Under the pieces are notes generated by a model. That model ran no database searches. It worked only from the letters and a program-made list of their open reading frames with translations, and was not told the origin of the DNA. Shown here piece by piece: positions 1,855 to 38,600 of a DNA stretch of 64,000 nt; the stretch's first letter is position 1, and the number at the start of each line of letters is the position of its first letter. A program made the translations under genes and the position numbers. This stretch comes from Macrostomum lignano. Taxonomy: Eukaryota. The DNA lies in assembly GCA_002269645.1 (NCBI GenBank), contig NIVC01003972.1, positions 1 to 64,000 on the forward strand, written 5' to 3'.

Positions 1855-1870
1855 TTTTTCATTTAAAAAA

Positions 1871-2572: not shown

Positions 2573-2769
2573 AAGGAGCTCTGGACCCCGCCGGAGTAAT
2601 CCGGCACGCTCTCAAACGTCAGCCGCCCAGCCGCTGCCTGCTGGACTCGCGATCCTCCGGCGTCACGAGAGCCGCCTAGACAACCGGCGGTGCAGATGGA
2701 ATTATCAAAAAGAAAACAGATCTTTCAACCGGATAGTTTTTAATTTTTTTATTTTTTCTAGAGAAAAAA

Positions 2770-3484
2770 ATGGCCCAACAAAATTCTCTATACGATCAGT
2801 CTCAATACGCTGAACCTAAAATACCGACAGCACCAAACCCAATGGCACCGAATTCGAACACACAAAGCCTGAATGCACCGAATCTGAATGCACCTCAATA
2901 TGAGCAACAAAAACTCTACCCCGTCATTACTTGTAACTCTCAACAGTTTCGACTAGTGGAGATTCAAAAAATGCGATGATCTTGAAAAAAATATTTTCCA
3001 CAACACAAAGAAAATTAAGCGCTATGACAGCCACTGTAAATTTTTCGACTACAGCAATATGATTCTAGGATCTGTGTCTGTTCTATCTGGATCTGCTGCG
3101 GCTGTCTCAACGTTGCCAGTCATCACAGCCCCAATCGCAATCCCGCTCGGCTCTGTGGGTGCTGCATGTGGACTTATTTCAGCAATTACTGGAGCATTAG
3201 CGCGAAACAGGCGAAAAAAACTAAAGCAGCTACAGGAGAAGCAAGTAAAAGAGAAAGGGGTGCACACTTCAATCATAGGGTACATTTCAAGGGCAATCGA
3301 GGATAAGTTCATTTCAGAGGATGAGTTCAAAACCATTCAGGATCTTTATGAACAATCAATTCGAATGAACTTGAACATGGTCGGTACTGATGACATGAGT
3401 CAGCTGAGAAATGAACTCGAGAAAGTTCTTCAACATTATGCGGGAAGAAAGTCGGCAAGAAGGACAACGAGAAATGCACAATGA
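2770..3484 (+). CDS. Conserved Polinton/adintovirus hydrophobic membrane protein, frameshift near 2970
   Basis: Joined frames: LYP...FRLVEIQKMR/DDLEK..KRY, a long Gly/Ala hydrophobic hairpin, then ISRAIEDKFISEDEF. This pattern is typical of a Polinton accessory family (from memory). Confidence 0.65.
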
Positions 3485-3488
3485 ACCC

Positions 3489-3890
3489 TTATGAAACACA
3501 GCCAATAATAATTTCCTTGTAGGTCTTTCGTGTTTTGGTCATTGCATACAAAACAGTCATGCACAGCTCACCGCAAATATCACTGCTAAGACCTTGGAGA
3601 ATAAAGTCTGAGCGATAAATTTTTTTATTATTTTTTCCCTTCATATAATTTCTTAGCTCTTCTGGTACTGCCGTCCCATAGCTATCGAAGTAATAACACT
3701 TGTGCTTGCGATCGGGATCAATCACCCAGCAAACCCAATGAGATCCTGGCTTATCGGTGGTGTCAAAGTTCATGATGCCGCATTCTTTTCTTAGAGGAAA
3801 ATCAGGCAGAGTGTCCCTCATAAATATTCCTCTAAAGTTTGGGATTTCCAGTTCGTTAGCCAAATCTTCAAGAAAGTTATTTGTCGTCAT
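3489..3890 (-). CDS. Adenain-like cysteine maturation protease
   Basis: Catalytic motifs GSHW (His), YFDSYG (Asp), Q-GLSSDICG (Gln/Cys). Confidence 0.93.
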   Translation of the reverse strand: MTTNNFLEDLANELEIPNFRGIFMRDTLPDFPLRKECGIMNFDTTDKPGSHWVCWVIDPDRKHKCYYFDSYGTAVPEELRNYMKGKNNKKIYRSDFILQGLSSDICGELCMTVLYAMTKTRKTYKEIIIGCVS

Positions 3891-3990
3891 TTTTTATGAG
3901 GTTTATTAAACTTTCTCTTAAACCTAAACCCAATCTCAACCTCCTAAATCCTAAGCCTAATCTCCACCTCCTAAACCCAATCTCCTAAAC

Positions 3991-6900
3991 CTAACTCCAG
4001 TGCCCGAACGGTAGACTGTTAATATTGTCATCAAAAATGAATCTTTTTATCTGCACCTGACAGTCCAATCTTCTTTTGCTGAATTGTGTGAATAATATGG
4101 TTTTTAGATTGTAGCTTTGAGAACTCATGTGATGTCTTTTTGTTGCAATTCAAGGCGTCTCTGTATTCAGCTTCATTAATTTCCTTCCTAACCACGCGTT
4201 TCGGAATTCCCTTTGATTTTTTAATTGGGTCTGACGACTCACATTTTACAAAATAGGACTTTGCTCTCAACCCAATGAATTCAGTGATTATGTCACCAGC
4301 AATCTCGTCCTTCATTTTCCCAATCACTTTCTTGTTAGTGGCGTCAAACACTTGATCGCCATTCTGTGTCCTGCAAGATTCATCATACTCAGACAAGTCA
4401 AACAAATCTTTTTGCTGCAGCATGTCCTGATAAATGTCTTCTGTTTGAATGTCCATAATAAAACTGTCTGTGTCAGTGTACAAGAGTTTCATTTTATCCT
4501 TGTACTGCTGCTTCATGCCATAGAAGAACTGGTACATCAGACGTTTTGATTCGTCGAGAACAGTGACACCTGTATAGATCGGCTTGCGCAGCGTCACCTT
4601 GGTTTTGTAAAATATGATCACACCTAAGTAGCTATTAAAGATATGGAGTTCTTTGAATGTTGGCTTTGACATATTTGCCTGAATAACAGCAGGCTCTGAT
4701 GAGGTAACAAGTTTCAGGTTTGTTCTTTTCCGCTCATTTCAAGAGTCTTGCCATAGACAGAGTTGTTGGCCAACTTAAAGAGGTTCTTGTCAAAGTCGTT
4801 GGTTGCTTTGGTCCTAAACTGGGTGTTCTTATCAATGTAGGGTTTCATCCACGCTTCCTCTGTAAATGTAAGAGCCCTGTGAACTTTGGTGACCCTGCAA
4901 CCAAGTGAGATAAAATACTGAAGCAGTTTGTAATGGATTTTGTAACGTGTCTTGTTGTTTAGATTCTGTGTTAGTTTCTCTGTATGTTCTTTTTCTGTTC
5001 CTGACAGGCGCCAAGTTCCATTGGGAGTTTCGATTATTTTCGGGCACTTGATGTTCTCTGGGAAGGGTGGAAAGTCAGAGAAATAGTCGTGAAGCTCTGG
5101 TGGAATGTAAACATCAACCTCATAAATGGCAGCCAATGAAAAGTCCCATTTGAATTCTGATGAGGGTAGCCATCGAAAATCTCTAACTGGAAGATCTTGA
5201 CTCATCGCCCACCCGTAGAGATTATTAGCGTCCAAGTAAGTAATGTAGTTTGAGGGCTGCTCCTTATTGTAAGATTCAATGTAGGGATTGTTTGCTTTTG
5301 CATACTGTGCAAATTGAGATCCCCCTCGCTTTGACGATTCGACAAAATTGTAATGTCAATGTCTGTAAGAAGTTCAATGTACCAATCTGGATCTTGATCC
5401 CATTTCATTTTAAGCAAAGATTCCCAGCTAGTGGCAGGCAGAGACACATAATGTGCTGGATCGAGGCCATATGCTGTGTACCAGGTGTATCTGAAGGTTT
5501 CAAACACATCGGCCAGCAGAAACACATCTGTGAAGAGGTAAAGCAGGTGATACTGGAAGAAGTTTTGACAATTAAAGTAATTATAGACATGCTTCGCGTG
5601 CTCATAGTCTTTGTCAGAGATTCCAGAGTCTGTTAGCTTGAAAAGAACTTTTCCTGTGGTGGTAAACCTTCTTCAAATACGTGATACCCAGTAATATTTT
5701 CATAGGGGTAGAAGCCTTTCTTTCTTAAAAGTTTAAATGATTCATCAGTTCTTGCAAATATCTTTGTATATGTACATTGTTCATCTTTTAGATTCTTGCT
5801 TAGTTCGTCTAGACTGGCAGCAAGAAATTGATATGAATCCTTCAGTCTTATCTTACCTTTACCCGAATTATCCTGTCTAATATCAACACACTTAAACTTC
5901 TCCTTGTTCTCTGCGATGCAATCAAGGTGTATGTCTGGAATCATGCCGATTTTTTCAACTATTAAATGCATGTCATAGTTCTTTGCGTTGTGACAAAATA
6001 TCGTTAGATCATGAATGTTCGATTTTAGCTTTAGATTACAGGTGTTATGCGCTGCACCTCTAAATTTCCCAGTAAAGTGGCAGTGGTCCCTAACGGTGGG
6101 GTTTTTAATATCAGTGCAAGTTAACTGTTTCCTGCAGATGTGGCAATGAGTTGCTGATAGGAAATTGCTTTCATCCTCCTCAGTCATAATTATTGGAACA
6201 GGTTGAAGGGTGCTAATCAATTTTTGCAACTCTAACATTCTGGCAATAAACTGCTCCACACACTGCTCTCCAAAGAAATAATTATACTCAACAAGTCCTT
6301 TTGTATTAATAAAGGCATATGCTACTGAATTGGGGACATGTCTTTGAGTTTGAGTTTGTTTTTGAGTATGAGTTTGTTTTTGAGTATGAGTTTGTTTTTG
6401 AGTCTCTGGCATGATTGAGCATTCGAAATCAGCATATACAACAAATGGGAGCTTCTCCATCTTGTGATAGTTCTTAAAACGGAGATACTTCTCTTCAGCT
6501 GAAGGAAGAGAGCAATTGGTCGGGTGATCCTCGCATGATAATTCATGCTCTGATAGTTTTTCAATACGCTCAGGTCCACTGTAATGCTTAAGGCACAAGC
6601 GGCAGATGGCAACAGCCTCGTGATGATTATTCAACTGCTTGTGAATGAGTCTTGAAAGATCTTTAATCCAAACATAGTGAGCCTCCTCTAGTAAATTACC
6701 AATCACTAGAAGATCACTCAGTCCGCCTTTTCCCCTCAGGATCTAAAACGTCTTTGCTACATCTGACTGGTTGAACTTTCTCAGTTTTTTCACTCCACTC
6801 AAAGACTGTGATTCTAATTTTGTTATTAAACACTTCTTCTAGCTTTGGGATCTGAGAGATCGCCAAGCCTCCTTTGTCAAACCTGATTCCCTTCTTTTCG

Positions 6901-23600: not shown

Positions 23601-26600
23601 CACTGGGAGTGCCACCGGGAGTGCTACAGGAAGTGCTACTGGGAGTGCCACTGGGAGTGCCACTGGGAGTGCCACTGGGAGTGCCACTGGGAGTGCCACT
23701 GGGAGTGCTACTGGGAGTGCCACCGGGAGTGCTACAGGGAGTGCCACTGGGAGTGCTACAGGGAGTGCCACTGGGAGTGCTACAGGGAGTGCCACTGGGA
23801 GTGCTACTGGGAGTGCCACTGGGAGTGCCACTGGGAGTGCTACTGGTAGTGCTACTGGGAGTGCTACAGGGAGTGCCACTGGGAGTGCTACAGGGAGTGC
23901 CACTGGGAGTGCTACAGGGAGTGCCACTGGGAGTGCTACTGGGAGTGCTACAGAGAGTGTCACAGGGAGTGTCACAGGGAGTGGCATCGGGGGTGACAAA
24001 AGGAGTGCCATAGGGAGTGACAAAAGGGGTGCCATCGGGGTGACAAAAGGAGTGCCATCGGGGGTGACAAAAGGAGTGCCATCGGGAGTGACAAAAGGAG
24101 TGCCATCGGGAGTGACAAAAGGAGTGCCATCGGGAGTGACAAAAGGGGTGCCCCAAGGAGTCAATGAGTGACACACAATGCGCCGCGCCCTTTGCTTACC
24201 ACAAGCTCCGCCTTGACGGCCTCCACAAGCAGGCGCATCGGCAGGGCCGGCAGCAGCAGCTCGTCCTCGAAGAAGTCACCAAGGCCGGCCAGCACGGACA
24301 GTCCGGCTGACAGGGACAAATCGGCCGCCTGGACGAACACCTCGCTGTTGCCCGGATCCTCCAGCTTCCGCGCCTCATCAATATAGACTCGAACCCGAAG
24401 CCGCGCCGGTTTGGCTTGGAGACCGTCGCCGCTGCCGACATCGTCCAGAACGTCGACACGCGGCTGCCGGGCTGTCAGCGCGGCGCTCAATGCGACTCTC
24501 GAATTGGCGTCGTCGGCTGCGGCCAGGCCGACCCGGCGGGAGGCGATGCGCACCAGCGAGCCCGCGTGGTCCACCGTCACCAGCACGCTGGAGCCCAGCA
24601 GGCCGCCAGTCAGGCTGGGCAGCCGCACCTCCGAGCCACCGCCGCCGCCTCCGCCGGTTGTCTCATCCTCGTCCTTGTCGACGCTGTCGGCCACCGACAG
24701 ACCGGGCACGGCCAGGCAGGCGCCGGCCTGGGCGGCGGCCTGAGCGGCGGCCTCGGCCTCTTCGAGCAGCTGCAGGCGACGCTGCTGAACCTCGCTGGCG
24801 CTGAGGTCGTCGCTGGACACGGAGACCCGCTCCCAGTCGTCGCCAACGTCGGAGCCGCCGCTGTCTAAGCTGGCCGCCGAGCCCTGCAAGATTTTGGATA
24901 CTTCAGAGGTTCAGTTTTCGGAACCAGGGGTTGCGGAGCGAAAGTTATATCTAAAAATCATCATACTACTGAAGCTCCTGCTCAGTAGTGTAGTAAGCAA
25001 ATAGCTTAAATTCCATGGAAAGGCTGAAGCAACCAACCCGGTGCTTTGCACTGGCAACCAAGCGGCGGCCAAGGCGCTCTACAAACTGTTGAGGCGCATT
25101 GGACTGCTGCTGCTGCTGCTGATGATGATGTTGCTGTTGCCTAGCAACTGCGATTGGCGACGCGCTTGGCGACGAAGCTGAAGCTGTTGAAGGCGACGAG
25201 GAAGCTCCGGAGACGAGGAACTCGACGGGAGCGGAGGCGGCGTAGGCGGGGGCGCCGGGCGGACCCTCAGCCGAGCAGCTGTTGTTGACGGCCTGCCGGG
25301 CAAAGCTGGCGGCGTCCTCAGAGCCCGGGTCGGTGTCGGCGTCTGACGAGTCGCCGCTGGCCGAGCTGGAGCAGCAGCTGTCCGAGGCGCTGGCCGGGCA
25401 GGCCGGGTCCAGCAGGAGGCGCAGGCGGGCTCGGGGAATCGGCAACCAGACGGCGGCCACGGGGCCGGGCGGCCGGTCAGGCAGCCGCATGCCGCGCCGG
25501 TCCCGCTGAAGGCAGTCGGCAAAGTCGGCGAAGTCTTCGCCCATGCGCAGCAGGAACAGGTACTGCAGGTGCGTGAGGGCCAGCCGCAGCTCCCTGCCCG
25601 GGTCGGAGGGCAGGTCCAGCAGCACCACGAAGGAGTCCGGCGAGGAGCCCGCGGCAAGGAACGCATCGACGCGCCCGGCATCCAGGCAGGGCTGGCGGCG
25701 CGTCTTTCTGGTGTCGGCGCCGGGCGCGGCAAAGTCGCACCAGAGCCGGGGGCAGCGGAGGTGCCACACGGAGGATGGCGGAGCCACCGGGCCAACGGAG
25801 GCCGCCGCCTCGGCCAATGCGACGCGAAACGGCAGCCAGTCAAAGTCGGGATCGCCGGGGAAGTCGCCGGTTGAAGAGTCGGCTGCAGAAATGGCGGCCG
25901 CCAGCGAGTCGGCGAAGCCGGCCGGATCGTTGGAGATCGTCACGGAGTCCGCTTGCGCCTCCAGCACAGTTGGCCGGACCTGGTGCAGCTGCGGTGGCTG
26001 CTGCTCAGGTGCAGCCTTTGCTGGGATGAGCAGCTGCGTTGAGAATGAGGGGGCGAAGAGACTCCTCAATATGCTGTTCTCAGGGTCCTCAACGTGTTGT
26101 CCTCAGAGGCCTGAATATACTGTCCTCAGGGGCCTGAATATACTGTCCTCAGGGGCCTGAATATACTGTCCTCAGGGGCCTGAATATACTGTCCTCAGGG
26201 GCCTGAATATACTGTCCTCAGGGGTCTGAATATACTGTCCTCAGGGGCCTCAAAGTGCTGTCCTCAGGGGCCTGAATATGCTGTCCTCAGGGGCCTGAAT
26301 ATACTGTCCTCAGGGGCCTCAAAGTGCTGTCCTCAGGGGCCTGAATATACTGTCTTCAGGGCCTGAATATACTGTCCTCAGGGGTCTGAATATACTGTCT
26401 TCAGGGCCTGAATATACTGTCCTCAGGGGTCTGAATATACTGTCTTCAGGGCCTGAATATACTGTCTTCAGGGCCTGAATATACTGTCCTCAGGGGCCTG
26501 AATATACTGTCCTCAGGGGCCTTAACTTGCTGTCCTCAGGGTCTTCAAAGTACTGTCCTTGGGGTCTTCCATGTGTTGTCTTCAGGGGCTTCTATATGAT

Positions 26601-29600
26601 GTCCTCAGGGGCCTCAAGGTGCTGTCAACAAGGGCTCAGATGCTATTCTCAGGGCCTCAGATGCTATCTCCATGACCCATCCTGAATCTCCATGACCCAT
26701 CCTGAATCTCCATGACCAATCCTGAATCTCCATGACCCATCCTGAATCTCCATGACCAATCCTGAATCTCCATGACCCATCCTGAATCTCCATGACCAAT
26801 CCTGAATCTCCATGACCCATCCTGAATCTCCATGACCCATCCTGGACCCATCCATGACCCACCCATCCATCTAAAATCAGAGCCCCAGAGACAGCCATGG
26901 AGATGAGCAGGTCTCACCCTCGGGAAGATGCTCTCGGCCAGGACGTGCAGCGGTTCGCTGGAGCCGCTGGACTGAATCTGCAGCTGCTCCTGAAGCAATA
27001 ACGGGGTGAGAGTTGAGCTGAGACATCTGCAGTTGCTACTTGTTAGTAGAGTCGTGCGCAAAAACAGTTAATGTTAGTTTCCGCTACCAGAAAGCTTTAA
27101 CAGAATTGCATAGGGAAAATGTACTTACAGATTTCTGAAAATAATTACGACTGAAAACAAAGATTAACACATTTGAAACGGACAGTACATTGAAAACTAT
27201 TAAATTGGACTGACTTCCAACCAACAAAACTGTTTTCAGTGCTTTACAGTCCAGTGTGCTGACAAGTTTGTAAATACGAATACGTTTGAAATGCAAAAAT
27301 AGAGAGGTCCAACAGGAGACACGAGAGAAGTAGAGGGAGAGAATGGGAGAGGGAGAGGAGGGGAGAGGAAGAGGAGAGAGAGAAAGGGAAGAGAGGGGGG
27401 GAGAGGAAGAGGAGAGAGAGAAAGGGAAGAGAGGGGGGAGAGGAAGAGGAGAGAGAGAAAGGGAAGAGAGGGGGGAGAGGAAGAGGAGAGAGGAAGAGAA
27501 GGTGGTAGGGAAAGAAAGGGGGAGGGACAGAAGGGGAGAGGAAGAGGGGAGGGAGAGAAGGGGAGGTGCATGAAGGACTAGAATATGAAAATGTGCAGAA
27601 TATGTGCAGAATATGTTGATAACAGGCATGGTCAGATGGAGGAGGCGACTACTAAATGTTGCAGCCACAAGCAGGATACTTCCAGAGGCCATAATGACAG
27701 ACTTCTTAAAATGAATAATGAGCCGTGACAGCTTCCAGTAGAATTTATGATTGCTGTGGCCCAAACACAGCAGCTCCATTTCGCAATATTAACCAAAGAG
27801 CTGCAAGCAGGCAACAGGAAAAGCGGCTGGCAAAGCTTACAGGCTGGATGATGCTGCTGTCAAACGATTGCAACGAGGCGACCTGCTAGCGTTGAACAGT
27901 TTAAAACAGATCAACTTACAGCATGTGACCTCAGTGCAGTGTGAGCAGCATGGAACACGAGGAATCAAGCGAACTCAGGCAGAGCTGAGACGTAAATAAA
28001 AAATCCGACTTACCAGATTTTTGCTGAGCTTCAAGCTGAACGCATTCAGCCAGATCAGCGTGTCAAAGTCCAGCCTCAGGTGCAGAGGGCTCAGGTGCGC
28101 GTACAGGCAGGGCAAGGGGGCTGCGAGGGACAGAGGGGGAAATACATGAAATTCTGTAAAACAGGGTGACCCACTATGAACCAGAGTCCTCAGTCTCAAC
28201 CCTACAGAGTCCTCAGTCTCAACCCTACAAAGTCCTCAATCTCAGCCCTACAGAGTCCTCAATCTCAACCCCACAGAGGCACGCGAAGGTGTATTCAGCA
28301 CGCCAGTGAAGTATGAGACAGACTAGGCCTATGGGCTACGGTCTGCGATGCTTCACGCCTGCCCCTATCTTTGGCAGGTCAAGGCTGGTGGGAGGTCTGC
28401 ACCCTCTATTTGCCTCTGGCAGCCGCAGACCCCCCCCCCACGCTGTCTCGCAAGTCGACCCAGGGTACTCGTCCCCGCGTGTGTTCAAGGCAGACCCTAC
28501 GGCTGCCGGACAGACTGGGCTCCGGCGCTGGTGACCCAACCAGTGGCTTCGGCCGAATTTGGGTATGCGGGTCTGGCTCGCCAACCTGCAGGCCGTGGTA
28601 CTGCTCAACGTACTCTCTAATGCCTAAGGTGTTGACCGTGCCGATGGGCTGGAAGGCCGGGGAGTAGTCCGGTCGCAAGCGGTCCCCCTCCTGGTGTCGG
28701 GCCAGCCTTGAGGGTTCTATTGGCCTACTACCCGGTCAGGTGGAGCGGCCGGGTGGGTACCGCGCCCCTTTGAGGGTAGCCCACCAACCTTTATCATGGC
28801 CTTCGAGCCGACTATGGATAACCAAGCTTTTTCTAGGGACGGGGACCCTTCTAAACCCCAACCTCAGTCCGAAGGACCGGCCGGCCCTGCTGGCAGATCC
28901 CAACCGACTGATTCAACTGTGGCAAAGGAAGGACCGGCTGGCTCTGCTGGCAGATCCGACCAGAGCTACCAAACTCAAAATACCCAAAGACCTGCCAGCT
29001 CCGCTGGTGGATCTAAGGGAACCGCGAGCTCTGAGCCTAAAGGATCGGCCAAATCTGGCAGATCCGATGAAGCTCAGCGGGCTCGGCTTGAGCGCAAACG
29101 CGCTAAACAACGCGCCAAAAGGCAGGCCAAGAAGGGAGCTGCGGGGGCCAAAGCGGCGGCGTCCACCATGGATGCTGAAGCGACTGGCGTCCCAAGGCAA
29201 CCAGACGGGCCGGCCGGTGGAAGCTCCGGTAGTTCAGCGGCAGCGCTCCCTGGAGATGCTGCTGCGGCTGCTGAGGCCGAAACCACGGCGCAACAAATGG
29301 CCACTGCCAACAAGGAGGTTCCTTCGGGAGCTACCTTTGCGGCAAAGGCCAAGGCCAAAATCCCGGGAGTGATCATCCAAGGTCGCGACCAGGACTGGAC
29401 CACTGACCAGCTTCAAAAAGTGTGGAGTGCTGTTGACTCCTATCTGATTGAGCTGACTGTCGAGGAGGGAATCTCCATCGGCATTGAGCGGATGGTGCTG
29501 CGAAGCACATTCGTTCTTATTGCTCCTAGCAGTGAGGAGGACGCTCGGCAGCTGCTCCAGCGGCTACCGACGGTCTCCTTGGATGCTGACCTTGGCGGAG

Positions 29601-32600
29601 CTCTTTTTCTTCGCGAGGGCCAGCGTCCAAAGACGATACCCTATGTGGTTTTCGTCCCTGCTAAGAGCACCGCAGCTGGACCAGACGTTATCCGCCGGGT
29701 CCTACTGCGTCTGAACCCCGACCTCCCTGCTAGTGGACTGGTGTATCACCGCCGGGTCCGCAGGGGGGAGACGGGCAACTCAATTGTCCTCGGCCTTTCC
29801 AGCACTTGGGCGAGTCGGTACCCTAATGGATCCTCTTTCCAGCTGGGTGCCCTCAAGCTCAAGATGCGCCGAGGAAAGTCTGCCAAAGGGAAGGCTACTG
29901 CCAACCCCGGCATCTCCGGCAAGAGCGGGGCGCAGTCTAAGGCCCAAGGAAAGGCGCAAGCCAATCCCAAAGCCAAAGCTGCGTCTCGCCCCTCTGCTAG
30001 CAGCAGTTCGGCCACCGCGGTAACGGCTCCGGCCAAGCCCCGGGAACCGAACCTGCTAGTCGGAGAAGGAGTTGAGGACGAGGCCGGGTCTTCGGAATCC
30101 GAGCTCTCCTCGGCCGCCCTGGTGGGGTCTGAAGTCAAAGATGCAGATGAGGAAGCTTCCTCCATCCTGTCATCGGAGCCTGAGGACTCTGCTGGGGAGG
30201 GGGGGGGCGGTGAGGGTGAGGAGGCCATGGACGTCGACCAACTCCCATCTCCCAGTCAAGCCCCAGCGGCCTGGGACGAGGACGATCTGTTGTCCAAGTC
30301 TCCTTGATGGCCCTGGGCTCTAGCCAGATATTGCATTTAATACAGTATGACTAAGCTCCACGCTGCCAAAGGAGCGACATTCTGTCTGCAAATAAATCTA
30401 CAGCATTGCGTATCTGCGTCAGTAAATCTGATGAAGATTGCTGAGCTGTACAGGCCAGGCCTCATCCTGATCCAGGAACCCTGGATGCGCAACGGTAAGT
30501 TGCCCAACATTCCCTCTGGCTACTCTGATTTTTATGTGTGTGGCCCGGGGAACAGCCGCCCTAGAGCGGCTATCCTCGCTGCTAGCCATCTCCAGACTTG
30601 GCTGAGGACTGATCTCTCTGATGGAGACCTTTGCGTCATCCAATCTAATCATCTCTCTCCGCGTACGTGTCTTGTTGCCTCGGTTTATATCCCAGGCGAC
30701 AGAGACCCTGCTCCCGAGAGTTTACTGCGCCTTGCGCAGTACTGCGAGTACCAGAACGCTGAGCTGTGCTTAGGGGGCGACCTCAACGCGCACCACAAGC
30801 ACTGGGGCAGCAAAGATACCAACACTAGAGGAGAGGAGCTTCTGGCCCTCATCTCTAACACAAACCTCATGCTCTGCAACCGCGGTAGCACTCCTACCTT
30901 TAACAATGGCAAATGGACTGAGGTCTTCGACGCCACACTCGTTACCCCAAGACTCTTTGACAGAGTTGAGGAGTGGAGAGTCTGGTCTGAGGAGCCCTCC
31001 CTGTCTGACCACTGCTTTATCGTCTTTAACATCGCGGACACTAAACCCAGTCTCCGATCACTTGGAGGCGCAATATCCGCAACACTGATTGGGCGGCCTA
31101 CAAGGCTGCCCTTGATCTGCACCTGCAGGAACTCACGGACTTACGTCCGATTGAGACCTGCGAGGATGTGGATCATATGGCTGAGACGCTGACAGGTTGC
31201 ATTATTGCAGCCTACGAAGCGGCTTATCCTGCTCGCGCCTACAAAGGCAAGACCTCGGCGCCGTGGTGGAACCCGGAGCTGGGGAAACTCGGGCGGAAGG
31301 CCAAAATCCTTCATCGCCGTGCCATGAAGACCGGAAACCCGGAGGACATGGAGCTTTTCCGGCAAGCCTCCCGCAATTTCAAATCTGAAGTGCGCAAGGC
31401 CAAGGAATGTAAGTGGCGCCAATTCTGCAATGAATTGGATCAAGACAGACCTACTTCTAGGCTTGTCAAGGCCCTTATAATGGACAAAATGTCCAAATTA
31501 GCCATGATCAAAAAAGATGATGGCTCTCTTACTAAAGACCCTGAAGAAGTGCTTCAGCATATGCTCAGCACATTCTTCCGAGGGTACCTACTGCTAGACC
31601 GGAGCCCAACCATTCGATGGATGGAGCCACCCTAGCGGCGGGCATTGTCACTGAAGACCTAATCGCTCGTGCGGTCAGAACCTTCAAACCCTTCAAATCT
31701 CCTGGACCTGATGGTATCTACCCTGTTCTCCTTCGTGAAGCAGCCAAGATACCCTCGTTCCTGAGACTCACCCGCAATCTTATGCGGGCCTCTATCCAGC
31801 TGGGATACGTTCCCAAATGCTGGACTGAAGCTCGGTTAGTCTTTATTCCCAAACCTGGGAAGGGTGACTACCAAAGCGTCAAGGCCTTCCGGCCTATTAG
31901 CTTAACGTCAGCAATGCTTAAGCTCACTGAGAGGCTTATTCTCTGGCGGCTGCTGTCCTGCGAGCTGACAGCGATGCCCCTCAGCAATAATCAGCACGCC
32001 TTCCGTACCGGGAGGTCGACTGACAGCGCCCTGCATGCGATTGTCGAGAAGATTGAAAGGGCGGTACTGGGTGACGGTTACGCCCTGGCTCTCTTTCTTG
32101 ACATTGTTGGCGCCTTCGACAACGTTATCTTTGAAGCGTTTCAGAGGGCCCTTCAAAATCGCAAAGCTCATGCTACCCTCATACGGTGGATCATGTACAT
32201 GATCTCCAACCGTACGGTCACTGCCTAACTTCTTGGGCAAACTGCCTCCACCAGAGTCTGTAAGGGTGGACCCCAAGGCGGAGTCCTCACCCCGACGCTC
32301 TGGAACCTGGTCATGGACGCTCTTCTGGGTGACTCCCGACCCGACCCCGTCTTCAAAGTCGGGTATGCTGATGACGTCACGGCCATTGTGGCAGGACCGT
32401 CTCCCAGCACGCTCAGGGATCTGATGCAGAGCGTTATCCGCAAAGCAGAATCCTGGGCCAATGACAATGGTCTGGAACTCTCTGAGCCCAAAACCGTTGC
32501 CATTATGTTTACCAGCAGGCTACGCTGGAACATACGTCCTCTGCAGCTCTACGGCAGAGATATTGCCTTCGCGCACCAGACCAGATGTCTCAGGGTCATA

Positions 32601-35600
32601 CTTGACCACCGGCTCAACTGGTCCTTCCACGTGAAAGCAAAAGCCAAGCGTGCCTCAGCCATCCTGGCCCAGCTCCGACGAGCACTTGGCACTTCTTGGG
32701 GTCTATCCCCAAAGCGGCTTTGGTGGATCTATACTTCCGTAGTTAGACCTGCCATTACGTACGCCTCTGTTGTCTGGGTTAGCGCTACCCAGGTCAAAAG
32801 CCATGCAGATCTGCTCAACACGATCCAAGGCAGAGCGTGTAGGCTCATCTGCAACGCCACCAGGTCCACACCCTTTGCTGGCATGGGGGCCTTCCTTAAT
32901 CTACCGCCTCTTGACCTCTTCGTCAGGGGCGAGGCGGCTAGAACGACGCGGCGTCTAATTGATGCCGGCGTCAAATTCATTTACATGAGAGCACCTGCTA
33001 AGCGGAACCTTGTCCCGCATAGCGACCTGTGCCTCAACTTTCTCAACGAGTGTCAGGCCAATCGCGTCTTCACCGATGGCATTGCCTCAACGCTCAACCT
33101 GAGACAGCGCTACTCCGTAGCTATCGACTCGCGCTATAACATCAATGACCAATGGAACCTTGGTGAGCTTCATTGCTACACCGACGGTTCTAAGCAGTCA
33201 GCCAACACCGGTTTTGGTGTTGGAATCTTCCTGAATGGGAGGGTCATCGCTACCCACGCTCAATACACTGGGGTCAACTCCAGTGTTTTCCAAAATGAAG
33301 TTCTGGCCATCAGCTCCTGCACTGCAGAGCTTCTCGCCACTGGCGTTACTGGTAAGAACATCATTTTCCATTCGGACAGCCAAGCTGCCTTGCACGCCAT
33401 CAGTGGCTGCAGCACCAACTCTGCTACAGTCCTCGACTGTATCAAACTCCTCAACGTGTTGGGTTCCGCCAACAAAATTACCCTTAAGTGGGTTCCGGGG
33501 CATGTGGGGATCCGAGGAAATGAGCTGGTTGACACCCTTGCAAAAGTTGGTGCCTCCGGCTCCTCTCTCGGCCCCGAACCTCTTGTCCCGATTCCTGGCT
33601 GTGTCATCGACTCACGCATCAAAGCGTGGATCAGGACTCAGCACCGCTCGACTTGGGCGAACCGCACGAACTGCAGGCAATCCAGAGGCGCTGTCCCTCA
33701 GCCCTCTCACCAGCTCCGGAAGCTCCTATTGCGCCTCTCGCGCAGAGACATCCGGGCTGCCACCATGACCCTCTCTGGTCACGGCTGCTTCTCCAGGCAC
33801 CAGTACCTGCAGGGCAACGCCACCAACGCCACCTGTAGTTTCTGCAACTCAGGTGACGAAACCGCTGAGCATTTCGTCAGCATCTGTCCCGCCTTCACGC
33901 GGGCCAGACTCACTTACCTCGGGCCACACACATCTATTACTGAAGCGTGCAAACCCGAAAACTTTAATCATCTCATGCGCTACCTTCGGGCCACCCGCAG
34001 GGCTGAACTCTCCTTTCCAGAGAGCACTATAACTGCTGGCGACACTGGGGGACCTCCCTGGGCGGCGCCAACCCTCCGTCCATAGCGACGCGTCGGCCGT
34101 TCAGGGATTAGCGGAATGGGCGTTCGCGCCTTCCCGCTGTGTCTCCCCCGGGACAGCCCTGCAGCTAAGCCAAGTAAGTCAAGTCAACCCTACAGAGTCC
34201 TCAGTCTCAACCCCACAGAGTCCTCAATCTCAACTCTACAGAGTCCTCAATCTCAACCCTACAGAGTCCTCAATCTCAACCCTACAGAGTCCTCAATCTC
34301 AACCCTACAGAGTCCTCAATCTCAACCCTACAGAGTCCTCAATCCCAACCCTACAGAGTCCTCAACCATACAGAGTCCTCAATCTCAACCCTAGAGTCCT
34401 CAATCTCAACCCTACAGAGTCCTCAACCCCACAGAGTCCTCAATCTCAACCCTACAGAGTCCTCAATCTCAACCCTACAGAGTCCTCAATCCCAACCCTA
34501 CAGAGTCCTCAACCCTACAGAGTCCTCAATCTCAACCCTAGAGTCCTCAATCCCAACCCTACAGAGTCCTCAACCCTACAGAGTCCTCAATCTCAACCCT
34601 AGAGTCCTCAATCCCAACCCTACAGAGTCCTCAACCCTACAGAGTCCTCAATCTCAACCCTAGAGTCCTCAATCCCAACCCTACAGAGTCCTCAACCCTA
34701 CAGAGTCCTCAATCTCAACCCTAGAGTCCTCAATCTCAACCCTACAGTCCTCAATCTCAACCCTACAGAGTCCTCAATCTCAACCCTACAGTCCTCAGAC
34801 GCGCACACAGTGCTCACCTGCGGCATCCACGGTGGCGGGGTAGAAGAACTCGGTGAAGTCAACGAAAGCGGTGACGGTGTTCCGGGGCAGCTGCAGCCGG
34901 GCCTTGTCCGAAGCCAGGAAAGGCGCCTTGTTGTTCTTGCTGGCGTCCGTGGAGGTCACGCAGCCCATGCAGAAGTCCTGCAGACTGACCGTCACGCAGC
35001 TCTCAATCAGCTGGTCGGTTTGGCAGCCGCCGCCCAGGGCTTCAACTCGCTGACAGTGCCACCGGTCGGCCTTCTCGTTCGCCTCGGTGTGCTGCAGCCA
35101 CCGCTCGCTGCGGCCAGCAGCTGAATTAAATCGTTGATTGATTAATTGGCGATTTAATGATGATTGATTGGCGATTTAATGATGATTGATTGGCGATTTA
35201 ATGATGATTGATTGGCGATTTAATGATGATTGATTGGCGATTTAATGATGATTGATTGGCGATTTAATGATGATTGATTGGTGATTTAATGATGATTGAT
35301 TGGCGATTTAATGATGATTGATTGGCGATTTAATGATGATTGATTGGCGATTTAATGATGATTGATTGGCGATTTAATGATGATTGATTGGCGATTTAAT
35401 GATGATTGATTGGCGATTTAATGATGATTGATTGGTGATTTAATGATGATTGATAAGTGATTTTATGATGATTGATTGGTGATTTAATGATGATTAATTA
35501 ATGATTTATTGATGATTGATAAGTGATTTCATTATGATTGATTGGTTATTTAATGATGATTGATAAGTGATTTAATGGTGATTGATTGGTGATTGATTAA

Positions 35601-38600
35601 TGATTATTGATCGGTTTCTTCACGATGATTGATTAATGATTATTGATCGGTTTCTTCACGATGATTGATTAATGATTTAATGGTGATTGATTGGTGATTT
35701 AATGATTATTGATTGGTTATTTAATGATGATTGATAAGTGATTTAATGGTGATTGATTGATCCATTCAATTATAATTGACTAATGATTTAAAGAAACAGG
35801 CAATTACCGAATGGGTGCATCGGATACAGGTGAAAGCCAATGTTGAGCAGGGTGAGCTGGATTGCGCCGTTCACTACTGAGCTTTCGCTTAGCTTTGAGT
35901 CTGCAAATTTATAATTATAACGCCGGTTAGTGCTGGGGTTCGGACAGTGGACAGTAGCTAGGGTTCCGGATAGAGGACATTACGAGCGTAGGGCTCGGAC
36001 AGAGGACAGTAGGGTTCGGAAATAGGACACTAGGGTTCGGACAGGACAGTATAGGGCACGGACAGAGGACAATATAGGGCTCGGACAGAGGACAGTATAG
36101 GGCTCAGACAGAGACCAGTAGGACTCGGACAGAGACCAGTAGGGCTCAGACAGAGACCAGTAGGACTCGGACAGAGACCAGTAGGGCTCGGACAGAGACC
36201 AGTAGGGCTCGGACAGAGACCAGTAGGGCTCGAACAGAGACCAGTAGGCCTCGAACAGAGACCAGTAGGGCTCGAACAGAGGACAGGGCTCGAACAGAGA
36301 ATCAGAAAGTAAGGCTCGGACAGTGAACAATGGACCTCGGACAGAAGCTACGCACCAGATGAGCTCTCCTCGCAAAAGTGCAGGTCCACCCGGCCAGTGT
36401 GCAGGTGGTAGGAGGTCTCAAGGATGTCGAATCGGCGAAACGCCAGCTCGCTGGAGCTCTCCGAGGAGGCGCCGCTGGCGGCGGACTGGCGCTGCTGCTG
36501 CAGCTGCTGGGCCGGAGACAGGGCGGAGGCGTGCGACAGCCGGTGCTGGCTGGGCACGGACGGCCCCAGCCCCAGGCTCTGCTGGAAGCAGAAATTCAGA
36601 CGGAACAGAATATTCTCAGGCATCTTAGAGGGGCGATTTGAGGCAAAGCTCTGTGGCTTTTTGGATCCCAGTGGTTTATTGAGTGACTCTCACAGTGGTT
36701 TATTGAGTGACTCTCACAGTGGTATATTGAGTGATTCTCACAGTAGTATATGGAGCGACTCTCACAGTGGTATATGAGGTGACTCTCACAGTGGTATATG
36801 AGGTGATTCTCACAGTGGTATATGAGGTGACTCTCACAGTGGTATATGAGGTGATTCTCACAGTGGTATATGAGGTGATTCTCACAGTGGTATATGAGGT
36901 GACTCTCACAGTGGTATATGGAGTGATTCTCACAGTGGTATATGAGGTGATTCTCACAGTGGTATATGGAGTGATTCTCACAGTGGTATATGAGGTGATT
37001 CTCACAGTGGTATATGGAGCGACTCTCACAGTGGTATATGAGGTGATTCTCACAGTGGTATATGGAGTGATTCTCACAGTGGTATATGGAGTGATTCTCA
37101 CAGTGGTATATGAGGTGATTCTCACAGTGGTATATGGAGTGATTCTCACAGTGGTATATGAGGTGATTCTCACAGTGGTATATGAGGTGATTCTCACAGT
37201 GGTATATGGAGTGATTCTCACAGTGGTATATGGAGCGACTCTCACAGTGGTATATGAGGTGATTCTCACAGTGGTATATGGAGTGATTCCTCAATCTGCC
37301 TTCACTCAAAGCCAGTCTCATCGCGTTAGTTTACGCACCTCCAGCTTCTTCTTAGCCAGCTGCTTGGATTGCTGCTTTGATTTCTCCACGCTTTTCTGCA
37401 GCGACTTAACGAACATTACGGTAGCCTCCAGCTGCGAGACAGTCAGCACCCACAGCAGGTCGTCCAACAACAGTTCGAGACGGGAGGCCACGATGCGCGA
37501 GTCTGGGGAAATGGCGCCAAGATTTTTACACTTGCAAAGCCTTTCAGATATGAATTCCAGGCTTCCCGCACCGCTTAGAAAAATATCTTAAGAATTGTTC
37601 GATGGAGCCGTCTGTGAGCACGATTAGAAGAGAGGGGGTTCCAGAGAGGCGGCAGGGAATCAGAAATGGGCAGCAGATAAAAGAGTGGCTTAGGGAAATA
37701 ATTACAAGGAGGATAGAGAGAGAGACGGGAGGTGGGGGCAGGGGGCAGAGATGGTGAGGGGAACGAGGGAGGGATGGGAGGTGAGGGTGAGAGGGAGAGG
37801 GGAAAGAGGAGGGATGAGGGTGAGGTGAAAGGGGAGAGGGAGGGAGGAAGAGGTGAAGAAAGAGGAAAGGGGAGAGGGGGGAGAGGGAAGGAGGTGTGAG
37901 GGGAGGGTACAGGGGAGAGGGATAGGCCAAGGGATGAGAGGGCAAGGAAGAGAGGGCAGGGAAGAGGGCAGGAATGAGAGGGCAGGGAAGAGAGGGCAGG
38001 GAAGAGGGCAAGGAAGAGAGGGCAGTGAAGAGGGCAGTGAAGAGGGCAGTGAAGAGGGCAGGGAAGAGAGGGCAGGGAAGAGGGCAAGGAAGAGAGGGCA
38101 GTGAAGAGGGCAGGAATGAGAGGGCAGGGAAGAGAGGGCAGGGAAGAGGGCAAGGAAGAGAGGGCAGGGAAGAGGGCAGGAATGAGAGGGCAGGGAAGAG
38201 AGGGCAGGGAAGAGGGCAAGGAAGAGAGGGCAGTGAAGAGGGCAGTGAAGAGGGCAGTGAAGAGGGCAGGGAAGAGGGCAGGGAAGAGAGGGCAAGGAAG
38301 AGAGGGCAGTGAAGAGGGCAGTGAAGAGGGCAGGGAAGAGGGCAGTGAAGAGGGCAGTGAAGAGGGCAGGGAAGAGAGGGCAGGGATGAGAGGGCAGGGA
38401 TGAGAGGGCAGGGATGAGGGCAAGGAAGAGAGGGCAGTGAAGAGGGCAGTGAAGAGGGCAGGGAAGAGGGCAGGGAAGAGAGGGCAGGGAAGAGGGCAAG
38501 GAAGAGAGGGCAGTGAAGAGGGCAGTGAAGAGGGCAGTGAAGAGGGCAGGGAAGAGAGGGCAGGGATGAGAGGGCAGGGATGAGAGGGCAGGGATGAGAG

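What the first reader, a model, noticed from the sequence alone, without database searches (positions are those of the whole stretch)
28279..28522. HDV-like self-cleaving ribozyme fold starting exactly at the 5' end of an RNase H-encoding LINE
The first non-minisatellite base is G1 of a perfect 7-bp P1 with the hallmark G1-U wobble. The P3/L3 (GGG-UACUCGU-CCC), a covarying P1.1 (A-U and C-G instead of C-G/C-G), P4 and the C-N-R-A J4/2 follow in HDV order. The 170-nt J1/2 folds into hairpins (GTGAAGTAT/ATGCTTCAC, CCTGCC/GGCAGG, GGTCTGC/GCAGACC). P2 and P3 compete for one G, which one extra G would resolve. HDV-like ribozymes are known to process 5' ends of R2, RTE, L1Tc and some LOA-clade elements; an example from this lineage may be new. 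It lies on the antisense strand of BLTP3, so it would not cut the host pre-mRNA.
Basis: partly seen in the sequence, partly recalled or inferred. Interest (0 to 1): 0.85.

Follow-up and report, generated by a model that had tools for sequence, protein, structure and literature searches.

The report
HDV-like ribozyme at a flatworm LINE's start
The first 241 bases of a dead jumping gene (a LINE) in the flatworm Macrostomum lignano fold like a hepatitis-delta-type self-cutting RNA that would trim the element's transcript to its exact first base; related LINEs elsewhere keep the same fold, so this is probably a real but unsurprising new member of a known kind.

Summary
G28279 is the first base after a 23-bp minisatellite and starts a perfect 7-bp P1 with a G-U wobble. 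P2, P3, L3, P1.1, P4 and a CAGA J4/2 follow in HDV order.

A fold of this kind starting exactly at that base arose in 7 of 40,000 dinucleotide shuffles. It arose in 0 of 40,000 when G1-U and the L3 U and G were also required.

The same descriptor, run on 84 related LINE loci (505 kb), gave one strict hit. It lies in the 5' UTR of an intact related LINE (L014). A second intact LINE (L011) and a multi-copy group of about 15 loci show the same layout. P1/P1' sequences differ completely between these lineages yet stay complementary. In the multi-copy group, similarity between copies begins at G1. Rfam's HDV models are the best sub-threshold matches for L011 and the only ones for L014.

Weak points: the window copy has a 4-bp P2 that competes with P3, it matches no Rfam model, no other M. 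lignano copy could be fetched, and cleavage is untested. This copy's ORF2 is broken.

HDV-like ribozymes at LINE 5' ends are already known (R2, R4, RTE, Baggins, L1Tc). This is a new member of a known kind.

The parts
28182..28278 (+). 5' flank: 4.2 copies of a 23-bp minisatellite (CAGAGTCCTCAATCTCAACCCTA). The last 14 bases, 28265-28278 TCAACCCCACAGAG, are the upstream copy of the probable target-site duplication.
28279..28285 (+). P1 5' strand, GCACGCG. The predicted cleavage site is the phosphate between 28278 and 28279, and G28279 is the first base of the element.
   Evidence: Boundary.
28286..28458 (+). J1/2 peripheral domain, 173 nt. Folded alone it forms a closed multibranch structure (-68.4 kcal/mol) with hairpins 28306-14/28348-56, 28358-63/28373-78 and 28394-400/28425-31. 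It begins AAGGUGU, as does J1/2 of L014.
28459..28463 (+). P2 5' strand, CCCA(G). G28463 is shared with P3.
28463..28475 (+). P3-L3-P3': GGG-UACUCGU-CCC. U28466 and G28471 sit where HDV has U20 and G25. An alternative register is a 2-bp P3 (G28464-C28475, G28465-C28474) with an 8-nt L3, UACUCGUC.
   Evidence: The conserved L3 U and G are described in PMC3774820.
28476..28482 (+). P1 3' strand, CGCGUGU. It follows P3' directly.
28483..28484 (+). P1.1 3' strand, GU. It pairs with C28468 and A28467 of L3.
28485..28507 (+). J1/4 (UCAA) and P4 (GGCAG, a 9-nt loop, CUGCC).
28508..28514 (+). J4/2, GGA-CAGA. C28511 is the predicted catalytic cytosine, equivalent to HDV C75.
   Evidence: In the Rfam RF00094 alignment of L014, the GGCCAA segment aligns with the consensus GGCuAA segment of the HDV model.
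28515..28519 (+). P2 3' strand, (C)UGGG.
28796..30307 (+). ORF1, 503 aa and intact, with no Pfam match. It is homologous to ORF1 of the related element L002 (24% identity, E 8e-8).
30347..34085 (+). ORF2, encoding AP-endonuclease, reverse transcriptase, RNase H and a C-terminal Cys/His motif. It is broken by frameshifts between 31057-31084 and between 31578-31629, and by an in-frame stop at 32226.
34086..34183 (+). 3' UTR ending ...CTGCAGCTAAGCCAAGTAAGTCAAG. It is 75% identical over 91 nt to the 3' UTR of L001, a relative with 57% ORF2 identity.
34184..34791 (+). 3' flank: 28.5 copies of the same 23-bp minisatellite. The first 14 bases, 34184-34197 TCAACCCTACAGAG, are the downstream copy of the probable target-site duplication (13 of 14 identical to 28265-28278).

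Best explanation
Window 28279-28519 is the 5'-terminal HDV-like (nested double-pseudoknot) self-cleaving ribozyme of a Macrostomum lignano LINE. The LINE encodes AP-endonuclease, reverse transcriptase and RNase H, and occupies 28279-34183.

Proposed mechanism:
1. A transcript that starts anywhere upstream folds P1, P1.1, P2, P3 and P4.
2. C28511 in J4/2 and a Mg2+ ion bound near the G28279-U28482 wobble catalyse attack of the 2'-OH of base 28278 on the next phosphate.
3. This releases the upstream RNA with a 2',3'-cyclic phosphate and leaves a LINE RNA that begins with 5'-OH G28279.
4. Full-length reverse transcription of that RNA explains why genomic copies begin at G1.
5. The large structured J1/2 would hold P1 and P2 together. 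The retained fold may also help cap-independent translation of ORF1, as reported for other LINE ribozymes.

Shown here: the fold, its improbability by chance, its coincidence with the element's 5' end, and its conservation with compensatory changes in related LINEs.

Inferred: catalysis, the role of C28511 and any translation role.

This copy is a dead element with a broken ORF2, and its P2 is weak. It may be a decayed example.
For: 1. All helices and core nucleotides are in HDV register.

2. A position-specific shuffle test gave 7 of 40,000 loose hits and 0 of 40,000 strict hits. The window-wide background is 18 loose hits and 2 G1-U hits in 128 kb.

3. G1 is the element's first base. It is the first base after the minisatellite and is bracketed by a 13/14 target-site duplication. 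The relative L001 shows that the element's own tail ends in AAGTCA-type repeats, so the 23-mers are target rather than tail.

4. Prediction test. The strict descriptor over 84 related loci (505 kb, both strands) gave one hit, L014:45 on the sense strand. It lies 396 nt upstream of ORF1 of an intact LINE whose endonuclease is 43% identical to the window's. It has a 160-nt J1/2, a 6-bp P2, an ACC/GGU P3, L3 UCCACGUU, a GG/CC P1.1, an 8-bp P4 and a CCAA J4/2.

5. L011 is another intact LINE. It has a GCGGCC/GGCCGC P1, a 47-nt hairpin J1/2, a CACAC/GUGUG P2, L3 UCCGCGU, a UUCG-capped P4 and a GCCAA J4/2.

6. In a scan for the core alone, the only 3 of 22 sense-strand hits that lie 2035-2185 nt upstream of the endonuclease match are the window, L014 and L011.

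7. A multi-copy group (L017, L027, L032, L035, L043, L044, L047, L052-54, L056/57, L063-65, L070/71) has a sharp shared 5' boundary at GGGGUCA. This pairs 7 of 7, with G1-U, with UGACCCU about 150-175 nt downstream. That partner is flanked by CC-UAUGAGA-GG, then GU, then CAGA or CAAA, then CACAG, which pairs with CUGUG.

8. P1 positions 2-7 all show compensatory changes among the four lineages.

9. Rfam in E-value mode:
- L011 124-195 matches RF02682 (31.5 bits, E 1.7e-4) and RF01787 drz-agam-1 (21.9 bits).
- L014 204-291 matches only RF00094 HDV_ribozyme (19.8 bits) and RF02682 (14.5 bits).

10. Literature:
- In R2 ribozymes, P1 and P1' lie 23 to more than 700 nt apart, P4 is variable, and the L3 G is conserved (PMC3774820).
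- A structured J1/2 activates large HDV-like ribozymes (PMC4908430).
Against: - No Rfam HDV family matches the window copy, even at E<=10 on a 116-nt slice.
- A covariance model built from L014 and L011 does not retrieve the window core. That model also fails on the multi-copy group, so it has little power.
- P2 is only 4 bp, or 5 bp at the cost of a P3 pair. R2 ribozymes usually have at least 5 bp.
- The unconstrained minimum-energy fold pairs GCAC of P1 with the nearby GUGU, and it is 2.2 kcal/mol better than the fold with P1, P3 and P4 enforced. The energies of P2 and P1.1 could not be counted.
- No second M. lignano copy could be obtained, so there is no within-family covariation.
- The multi-copy group departs from the canon. 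Its P3 is 2 bp, it has no P4, and an 18-nt hairpin sits between P2 and P3.
- The Rfam matches for L011 and L014 are below gathering scores, and those regions were chosen after the motif had been seen.
- No cleavage data exist for any member.
Confidence: 0.8

Rival explanations
1. A conserved but non-catalytic 5' UTR structure. The same long-range pairing of the 5' terminus with a downstream hairpin region would serve as an internal promoter element, a translation enhancer, or a binding site for the element's proteins. The HDV resemblance would be convergent or vestigial.
For: No cleavage data exist. The window copy matches no Rfam HDV model. The multi-copy group has a non-canonical layout. The literature assigns extra, non-cleavage roles to LINE ribozyme folds, namely IRES-like activity and protein binding (PMC6765202).
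Against: The nucleotides needed only for catalysis are kept in all lineages: G1-U in three of four, the L3 U and G, and the C of C-N-R-A placed directly before P2'. The element's DNA 5' end coincides with the predicted scissile bond both in the window and in the multi-copy group. Cleavage predicts that coincidence and a mere structure does not. The only Rfam families that score on the relatives' core regions are HDV ribozymes.
Confidence: 0.1
2. Chance resemblance in a GC-rich 5' UTR. The first reader, free to choose helices by eye, assembled an HDV-like drawing from unrelated complementarities.
For: A 7-bp partner for the first 7 nt is found in 40% of shuffles. Loose descriptors give hits at about 1.4e-4 per position anywhere in the window. 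P2 is marginal.
Against: The full fold at that exact start occurs in 1.75e-4 of shuffles with the loose descriptor and in fewer than 2.5e-5 with the strict one. Homologous LINEs carry the same architecture at the homologous place, with compensatory changes.
Confidence: 0.04
3. A sub-case of the best explanation rather than a true alternative. The family has a working ribozyme, but this copy is an inactive relic. It would have lost a base in the CCCAGGG run (or carry other changes), in step with its two ORF2 frameshifts and its stop codon.
For: ORF2 is broken at three places. P2 and P3 compete for G28463, whereas L014 and L011 have clean 5-6 bp P2 helices plus 3-bp P3 helices. The window copy is the only one with no sub-threshold Rfam match.
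Against: A register with a 5-bp P2, a 2-bp P3 and an 8-nt L3 (UACUCGUC) removes the conflict, and the multi-copy group also has a 2-bp P3. ORF1 is intact, and other genomic copies are 88-98% identical at protein level, so the copy is young.
Confidence: 0.35

Closest known systems
R2 retrotransposon 5' HDV-like ribozyme (Drosophila and many other animals, including planarians)
   Same: A nested double pseudoknot sits at the 5' end of a non-LTR element. P1 begins at or near the element's 5' junction. There is a very long J1/2 (P1 and P1' lie 23 to more than 700 nt apart), P4 is variable, and the L3 G and catalytic C are conserved. Its role is to free the element RNA from a co-transcript (PMC3774820; PMC6765202).
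   Different: From my own knowledge, R2 has a single ORF and a restriction-like endonuclease; the papers read here show that it inserts only in 28S rDNA. The window element has two ORFs and encodes AP-endonuclease, reverse transcriptase and RNase H. This copy sits in a 23-bp minisatellite inside an intron. There is no sequence similarity.
Baggins and RTE ribozymes (including the drz-Agam-2 type) and R4/Dong
   Same: These are AP-endonuclease-type or site-specific LINEs whose RNA 5' end is made by an HDV-like ribozyme at position +1 (PMC3774820; PMC6765202). In Agam-2, a structured J1/2 (P1.2) and an extended P2 activate the core (PMC4908430).
   Different: The primary paper (Ruminski et al. 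2011, PMC3308841) could not be opened here. The comparison therefore rests on secondary citations and on my memory of that paper. The clade of the window element was not determined. No Rfam drz-Agam model matches the window.
L1Tc ribozyme (L1TcRz) of Trypanosoma cruzi and the ingi clade
   Same: This is an HDV-like ribozyme at +1 of a LINE that encodes AP-endonuclease, reverse transcriptase and RNase H, and it acts co-transcriptionally (abstracts of PMC3185411 and PMC4035085).
   Different: L1TcRz is a compact 77-nt motif that doubles as the Pr77 promoter. The fold here spans 241 nt and has a 173-nt peripheral domain. The hosts are unrelated.
Genomic HDV ribozyme (Rfam RF00094) and bacterial or insect HDV-like ribozymes (RF02682, RF01787)
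   Same: The order of helices is the same. The core also matches: G1-U wobble, L3 U...G, a P1.1 register equivalent to C21/C22-G39/G38, and C-N-R-A directly before P2'. Relatives L011 and L014 score on these models.
   Different: The window copy does not score at all. Its L3 is UACUCGU rather than UCCUCGCU. Its P1.1 is A-U plus C-G. Its J1/2 is 173 nt rather than a few nt. Its P2 is 4-5 bp.
Twister-variant ribozymes in Schistosoma mansoni non-LTR retrotransposons
   Same: This is a flatworm LINE that uses a self-cleaving ribozyme in retrotransposition (PMC8501958, abstract).
   Different: It is a different ribozyme class, twister, with a different fold.

Membership tests
HDV-like self-cleaving ribozyme (nested double pseudoknot) | P1 of 6-7 bp whose first nucleotide is the cleavage site, usually a G1-U wobble | tested here: met
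   28279-85 pairs with 28476-82, 7 of 7, with G28279-U28482.
HDV-like self-cleaving ribozyme (nested double pseudoknot) | A short P3 closing L3, with P3' followed directly by P1' | tested here: met
   GGG-UACUCGU-CCC is followed at once by CGCGUGU.
HDV-like self-cleaving ribozyme (nested double pseudoknot) | Conserved L3 U and G (HDV U20 and G25, which form a reverse wobble) | tested here: met
   U28466 and G28471 are at L3 positions 1 and 6. The feature is described in PMC3774820.
HDV-like self-cleaving ribozyme (nested double pseudoknot) | P1.1: 1-2 pairs between L3 positions 2-3 and the two bases after P1' | tested here: met
   C28468-G28483 and A28467-U28484.
HDV-like self-cleaving ribozyme (nested double pseudoknot) | P2 of about 5-7 bp joining the segment just 5' of P3 to the segment just 3' of J4/2 | tested here: inconclusive
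   Only CCCA/UGGG, 4 bp, if P3 keeps 3 bp. It reaches 5 bp if G28463 pairs with C28515, which leaves a 2-bp P3. In R2, P2 is at least 5 bp, although a third of elements have mismatches.
HDV-like self-cleaving ribozyme (nested double pseudoknot) | Catalytic C in J4/2 (C-N-R-A) placed between P4 and P2' | tested here: met
   C28511-A-G-A lies 3 nt after P4 and 0-1 nt before P2'.
HDV-like self-cleaving ribozyme (nested double pseudoknot) | Match to a curated covariance model (Rfam RF00094, RF02682, RF01787, RF01788, RF00622) | tested here: not met
   The window gives no match at gathering score or at E<=10. Relatives score below threshold: L011 31.5 bits against a cut-off of 44, and L014 19.8 bits against 50. 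The models do not allow for a 160-173 nt J1/2.
HDV-like self-cleaving ribozyme (nested double pseudoknot) | Helices supported by compensatory change in homologues | tested here: met
   Four lineages were compared: the window, L014, L011 and the multi-copy group. P1 positions 2-7 all change on both sides. P2, P3 and P4 also differ yet still pair. No within-species copies were available.
HDV-like self-cleaving ribozyme (nested double pseudoknot) | Mg2+-dependent self-scission giving a 5'-OH and a 2',3'-cyclic phosphate | not testable with these tools
   Needs in vitro transcription or 5'-OH-specific end mapping.
Ribozyme-terminated non-LTR retrotransposons (R2, R4, RTE, Baggins, L1Tc type) | Ribozyme on the sense strand, with the cleavage site at the element's 5' terminus | tested here: met
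   G1 is the first base after the flank and is bracketed by a 13/14 target-site duplication. In the multi-copy relatives, similarity between copies starts within about 3 nt of G1.
Ribozyme-terminated non-LTR retrotransposons (R2, R4, RTE, Baggins, L1Tc type) | The element is transcribed as part of a longer co-transcript | not tested
   No expression data. This copy lies antisense in an intron of a BLTP3-like gene, so the host pre-mRNA does not carry the ribozyme strand.
A named LINE clade (LOA, I, Nimb, Tad, R1, ingi) | Phylogenetic placement of the reverse transcriptase with reference elements | not tested
   No reference transposon library was at hand. Only the domain order is shown: AP-endonuclease, reverse transcriptase, RNase H, C-terminal Cys/His motif. 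For the relative L014, whose ORF2 was the query, the closest solved endonuclease-only structure is TRAS1 (E 1e-16).

The most novel reading that the evidence does not exclude
The window, L014, L011 and the multi-copy group would together define a previously undescribed, cross-phylum subfamily of large HDV-like ribozymes. It would be tied to one lineage of RNase H-encoding LINEs, found in a flatworm and in the unidentified hosts of several metagenome samples. Its features would be a 47-173 nt structured J1/2 and a tolerated 2-bp P3. One branch would have lost P4 and gained a hairpin between P2 and P3, a layout not reported for active HDV-like ribozymes.
Probability: 0.45. Interest if true: 0.55.

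Novelty: new member of a known kind. Interest (0 to 1): 0.45.

Why it matters
It adds a flatworm LINE family, and relatives in other hosts, to the list of retrotransposons that set their RNA 5' end with an HDV-like ribozyme. It also shows that current Rfam models miss such large-J1/2 examples.

In practice it gives a testable catalytic RNA (with a C28511U control) in Macrostomum lignano, a laboratory model. It explains why full-length copies start at a fixed G. It also offers natural variants for studying what the HDV fold tolerates: a 2-bp P3, a branch without P4, and an inserted hairpin between P2 and P3.

It does not change the general picture of LINE biology.

Tried and rejected
- **Rfam on the window.** No match at gathering score on the whole window, none at E<=10 on 27900-29000, and none on 28430-28545. 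No match at gathering score on 20 loci.

- **Other M. lignano copies.**
  - The ORF1 search found only three chimeric UniRef gene models, which identify the species.
  - Their DNA and the window's own ORF1 are not in the contig index.
  - An ORF1-core search found nothing.
  - Within-family covariation could therefore not be tested.

- **Other searches for relatives.**
  - The window has no second copy of the element.
  - The viral-contig scan with ORF2 found nothing.
  - L002 is a 40%-identity near-full relative, but I found no fold in its 448 nt upstream of ORF1. The contig may start inside the ribozyme.
  - L004 is 5'-truncated, and L003 (a butterfly locus) was not analysed further.

- **Descriptor variants.**
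  - A much relaxed descriptor gave 207 sense and 311 antisense hits, which is useless.
  - Its L015:398 hit overlaps a possible ORF1 start codon and was dismissed.
  - Its L060 and L069 hits, which have an L014-like L3, lie in the ORF2 zinc-finger coding region and are chance.

- **Flank similarity.** The apparent similarity of the flanks upstream of L014 and L011 is not significant: the score is reached by 50% of shuffles. There is no evidence of a shared target.

- **Covariance model.** Model R1, built from L014 and L011, finds only its own training sequences among the loci and nothing at the candidate in the window. It is too weak to be informative.

- **Rejected idea.** I first considered that the 23-bp minisatellite is the element's own 3' tail. 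The homologous 3' UTR of L001 ends in AAGTCA-type repeats without 23-mers, and the flanks fit a 14-bp target-site duplication.
Full report
**What is in the window.**

The finding sits at the 5' end of a 5.9-kb LINE at 28279-34183 on the plus strand.
- ORF1 (28796-30307, 503 aa) is intact and has no Pfam match.
- ORF2 carries AP-endonuclease, reverse-transcriptase and RNase H domains.
- ORF2 is broken by two frameshifts (between 31057-31084 and between 31578-31629) and by an in-frame stop at 32226.
- ORF1 matches three Macrostomum lignano UniRef gene models at 88-98% identity, so the window is from that flatworm and the family is young.

The same 23-bp minisatellite lies on both sides, with 4.2 copies at 28182-28278 and 28.5 copies at 34184-34791. 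I first thought it might be the element's tail. A relative from a JGI metagenome argues otherwise. L001 has 57% ORF2 identity and a 3' UTR that is 75% identical over 91 nt. Its 3' UTR ends in AAGTAAGTCA-type repeats and then runs into unrelated DNA.

The flanks fit a 14-bp target-site duplication inside a pre-existing array. TCAACCCCACAGAG precedes G28279, and TCAACCCTACAGAG follows ...AAGTCAAG. This sets the element's first base at G28279 independently of any RNA fold.

On the minus strand, 34795-35127 encodes a stretch matching Pfam BLTP3A_B (E 5e-6).

**Checking the observation.**

- P1 is GCACGCG (28279-85) with CGCGUGU (28476-82), including the G1-U wobble.
- P3 and L3 are GGG-UACUCGU-CCC (28463-75), followed directly by P1'.
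- P1.1 is C28468-G28483 and A28467-U28484, in the same register as HDV C22-G38 and C21-G39.
- J1/4 is UCAA.
- P4 is GGCAG, a 9-nt loop, then CUGCC (28489-28507).
- J4/2 is GGA-CAGA, with C28511.
- P2 is CCCA (28459-62) with UGGG (28516-19).

L3 has U at position 1 and G at position 6. That is the pair described as conserved in HDV-like ribozymes (PMC3774820).

J1/2 is 173 nt. Folded alone, J1/2 closes on itself at -68.4 kcal/mol.

The P2/P3 competition for G28463 is real. An alternative register removes it:
- a 5-bp P2, CCCAG/CUGGG;
- a 2-bp P3, G28464-C28475 and G28465-C28474;
- an 8-nt L3, UACUCGUC, compared with HDV UCCUCGCU.

**Is it more than chance?**

I wrote a descriptor with these rules:
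- a 7-bp P1, allowing G-U pairs;
- a 3-bp P3 directly before P1';
- an L3 of 6-8 nt;
- a two-pair P1.1;
- a P4 of at least 4 bp;
- C-N-R-A;
- a P2 of at least 4 bp;
- a J1/2 of up to 300 nt.

Over both strands of the window it gives 18 P1/P1' combinations, of which 2 have G1-U. That is about 1.4e-4 per start position.

I then forced the fold to start at the first base and made 40,000 dinucleotide-preserving shuffles of 28279-28620. These gave 7 hits. None remained when G1-U and the L3 U and G were also required. A bare 7-bp partner for the first seven bases occurs in 40% of shuffles. The weight therefore lies in the whole fold at that exact base, not in P1.

**Comparative test.**

No other M. 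lignano copy could be fetched. I therefore looked for related LINEs instead.
- An ORF2 search found relatives on metagenome contigs.
- An endonuclease alignment then pulled 80 related loci at 30-50% identity from metagenome contigs.

Over 84 loci (505 kb, both strands), the strict form of the descriptor returned exactly one hit, L014:45 on the sense strand.

*L014.* This is an intact full-length LINE (ORF1 441-1982, ORF2 1979-5644, poly(A) tail). Its fold is:
- P1 GGUGAUC with GAUCACU, including G1-U;
- a 160-nt J1/2 that begins AAGGUGU, the same seven bases as in the window;
- P2 CGUACU with AGUGCG;
- P3 ACC with GGU;
- L3 UCCACGUU;
- P1.1 GG with CC;
- J1/4 UUAA;
- an 8-bp P4;
- J4/2 CCAA.

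*L011.* This is another intact LINE (ORF1 519-1919, ORF2 1867-5478). Its fold is:
- P1 GCGGCC with GGCCGC, 6 bp with a G-C first pair;
- a 47-nt J1/2 that forms a 7-bp hairpin;
- P2 CACAC with GUGUG;
- P3 ACC with GGU;
- L3 UCCGCGU;
- P1.1 GG with CC;
- a UUCG-capped P4;
- J4/2 GCCAA.

In a scan for the core alone, without requiring P2 or P4, 22 sense-strand hits turned up in 569 kb. Only three lie 2035-2185 nt upstream of the endonuclease match: the window, L014 and L011.

*The multi-copy group.* A block just downstream of the L014 fold (GCGGCGCUAAAGGAG...CCUUGAAAAAAAAUCCC) is shared by about 15 further loci. Aligned, these copies share a sharp 5' boundary at GGGGUCAAGGGGAG, with unrelated DNA upstream.
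- GGGGUCA pairs 7 of 7, with G1-U, with UGACCCU about 150-175 nt downstream.
- That partner is preceded by CC-UAUGAGA-GG.
- It is followed by GU, 3-5 nt, then CAGA or CAAA, one base, and CACAG, which pairs with CUGUG.

This branch is a variant. Its P3 is 2 bp, it has essentially no P4, and a conserved hairpin sits between P2 and P3. That hairpin shows an A-U to G-C change. I am less sure of this branch's fold. Its value is that the element's 5' end is defined there by many copies and falls on G1.

*Across the four lineages.* Every P1 position from 2 to 7 changes on both sides while staying paired. P2, P3 and P4 also differ yet pair.

**Curated models.**

- Rfam gives nothing for the window, even on a 116-nt slice at E<=10.
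- For L011 124-195 the two best of 4227 families are HDV-like ribozymes: RF02682 at 31.5 bits (E 1.7e-4 for that slice, gathering score 44) and drz-agam-1 at 21.9 bits.
- For L014 204-291 the only matches are RF00094 HDV_ribozyme (19.8 bits) and RF02682 (14.5 bits).

All of these are below threshold, and the regions were chosen after I had seen the motif. They corroborate the reading but do not prove it.

A covariance model built from L014 and L011 alone retrieves only those two sequences. It says nothing either way about the window.

**How it most likely works.**

The evidence fits the mechanism established for other LINEs.
- In R2, P1 and P1' lie 23 to more than 700 nt apart, P4 is variable, and cleavage at the element's first base is seen in R4, Dong, Baggins and L1Tc (PMC3774820).

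By inference, a read-through transcript folds. C28511 and a Mg2+ ion near the G1-U wobble then catalyse cleavage between 28278 and 28279. The LINE RNA starts with 5'-OH G28279, which is why full-length insertions begin there. A role of the retained fold in ORF1 translation is reported for other elements (PMC6765202) and is only a conjecture here.

**Caveats for this copy.**

- The element is dead, because ORF2 is broken.
- P2 is marginal.
- It is the most divergent core of the set.
- An alternative local hairpin (GCAC with GUGU) competes with P1. The fold with P1, P3 and P4 enforced is 2.2 kcal/mol above the unconstrained minimum, before P2 and P1.1 are counted.
- A weaker alternative P1 exists upstream at 28095 (GUGCGCG, three G-U pairs).

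I put the family-level ribozyme reading at about 0.8. I put the chance that this exact copy is inactive at roughly one in three.

**Comparison and novelty.**

HDV-like ribozymes that process LINE 5' ends are well described. This includes RNase H-encoding LINEs (Baggins and L1Tc) and a flatworm R2 (planaria; PMC3774820). Searches of the paper library found no report for Macrostomum. Rfam does not capture these sequences. The clade of the element was not determined, because no reference transposon library was at hand.

The result is a new member of a known kind, with some added interest. It appears to be one of a conserved, cross-host set with unusually large J1/2 domains and non-canonical variants.

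Noticed in passing
window 28182-28278 and 34184-34791: The LINE sits inside a 23-bp minisatellite, with a 13/14 target-site duplication (TCAACCCYACAGAG). One copy cannot show whether the family prefers this repeat as a target.
   Followed up: partly
window 34101-34187; L001 2431-2519: The 3' UTR is conserved (75% over 91 nt) with an ORF2 relative of only 57% identity. Shared motifs include GGRTTAGCGGAATGGGCG and CTGCAGCTAAG, followed by AAGTCA-type repeats. This is a candidate recognition element for the reverse transcriptase.
   Followed up: partly
L014 286-326 and about 15 other loci (e.g. L017 1917-1961, L032 1375-1415): A block directly downstream of the ribozyme, GCGG(C/A)(G/T)CTAAAGGAG-N5-CCTTGAAAAAAAATCCC, is conserved across otherwise diverged LINE 5' UTRs. 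It contains a small AAGG/CCTT hairpin. The window shares only CGGCGCT (28523-28529). Its function is unknown.
   Followed up: no
window 28286-28292; L014 52-58: The seven bases after P1 are identical (AAGGTGT) in the window and in L014, although the rest of J1/2 cannot be aligned. In the window, GUGU can pair with GCAC of P1. In L014 no such pairing exists. Unexplained.
   Followed up: no
loci L017, L027, L032, L035, L044, L047, L056/57, L064, L065, L070/71 (e.g. L017 1861-1917): The multi-copy LINE group has a variant core: a 2-bp P3, no P4, and an 18-nt hairpin ((A/G)UGGY-GAAGA-GCCA(U/C)) between P2 and P3, with an A-U to G-C change. It is not known whether such a core can cleave.
   Followed up: partly
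window 28095-28101: GTGCGCG, upstream of the minisatellite, can also pair with the P1' strand 28476-82, 7 bp with three G-U pairs. It would be a weaker alternative P1 in a read-through transcript.
   Followed up: no
window 34795-35127 (- strand): This looks like an exon of a BLTP3-like gene (Pfam PF24917, E 5e-6), ending in a CAG|GTGAGC donor near 34822. The minisatellite and the LINE lie in the following intron, antisense to the gene.
   Followed up: partly
window 35139-35791 and 35980-36375: A 22-bp tandem array (TGATTGATTGGCGATTTAATGA, about 29 copies) is followed by a minus-strand ORF made of repeated SEPYWSL-like units. A GA-rich array lies at 27323-27566.
   Followed up: no
window 60892-61090 and 24480-24810 (+ strand): Other loose descriptor hits: 60892 (G1-U, P1 GCGTTGT with GTAATGT, several G-U pairs) and cores near 24669 and 24752. 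They are probably chance and are not tied to any element boundary.
   Followed up: no
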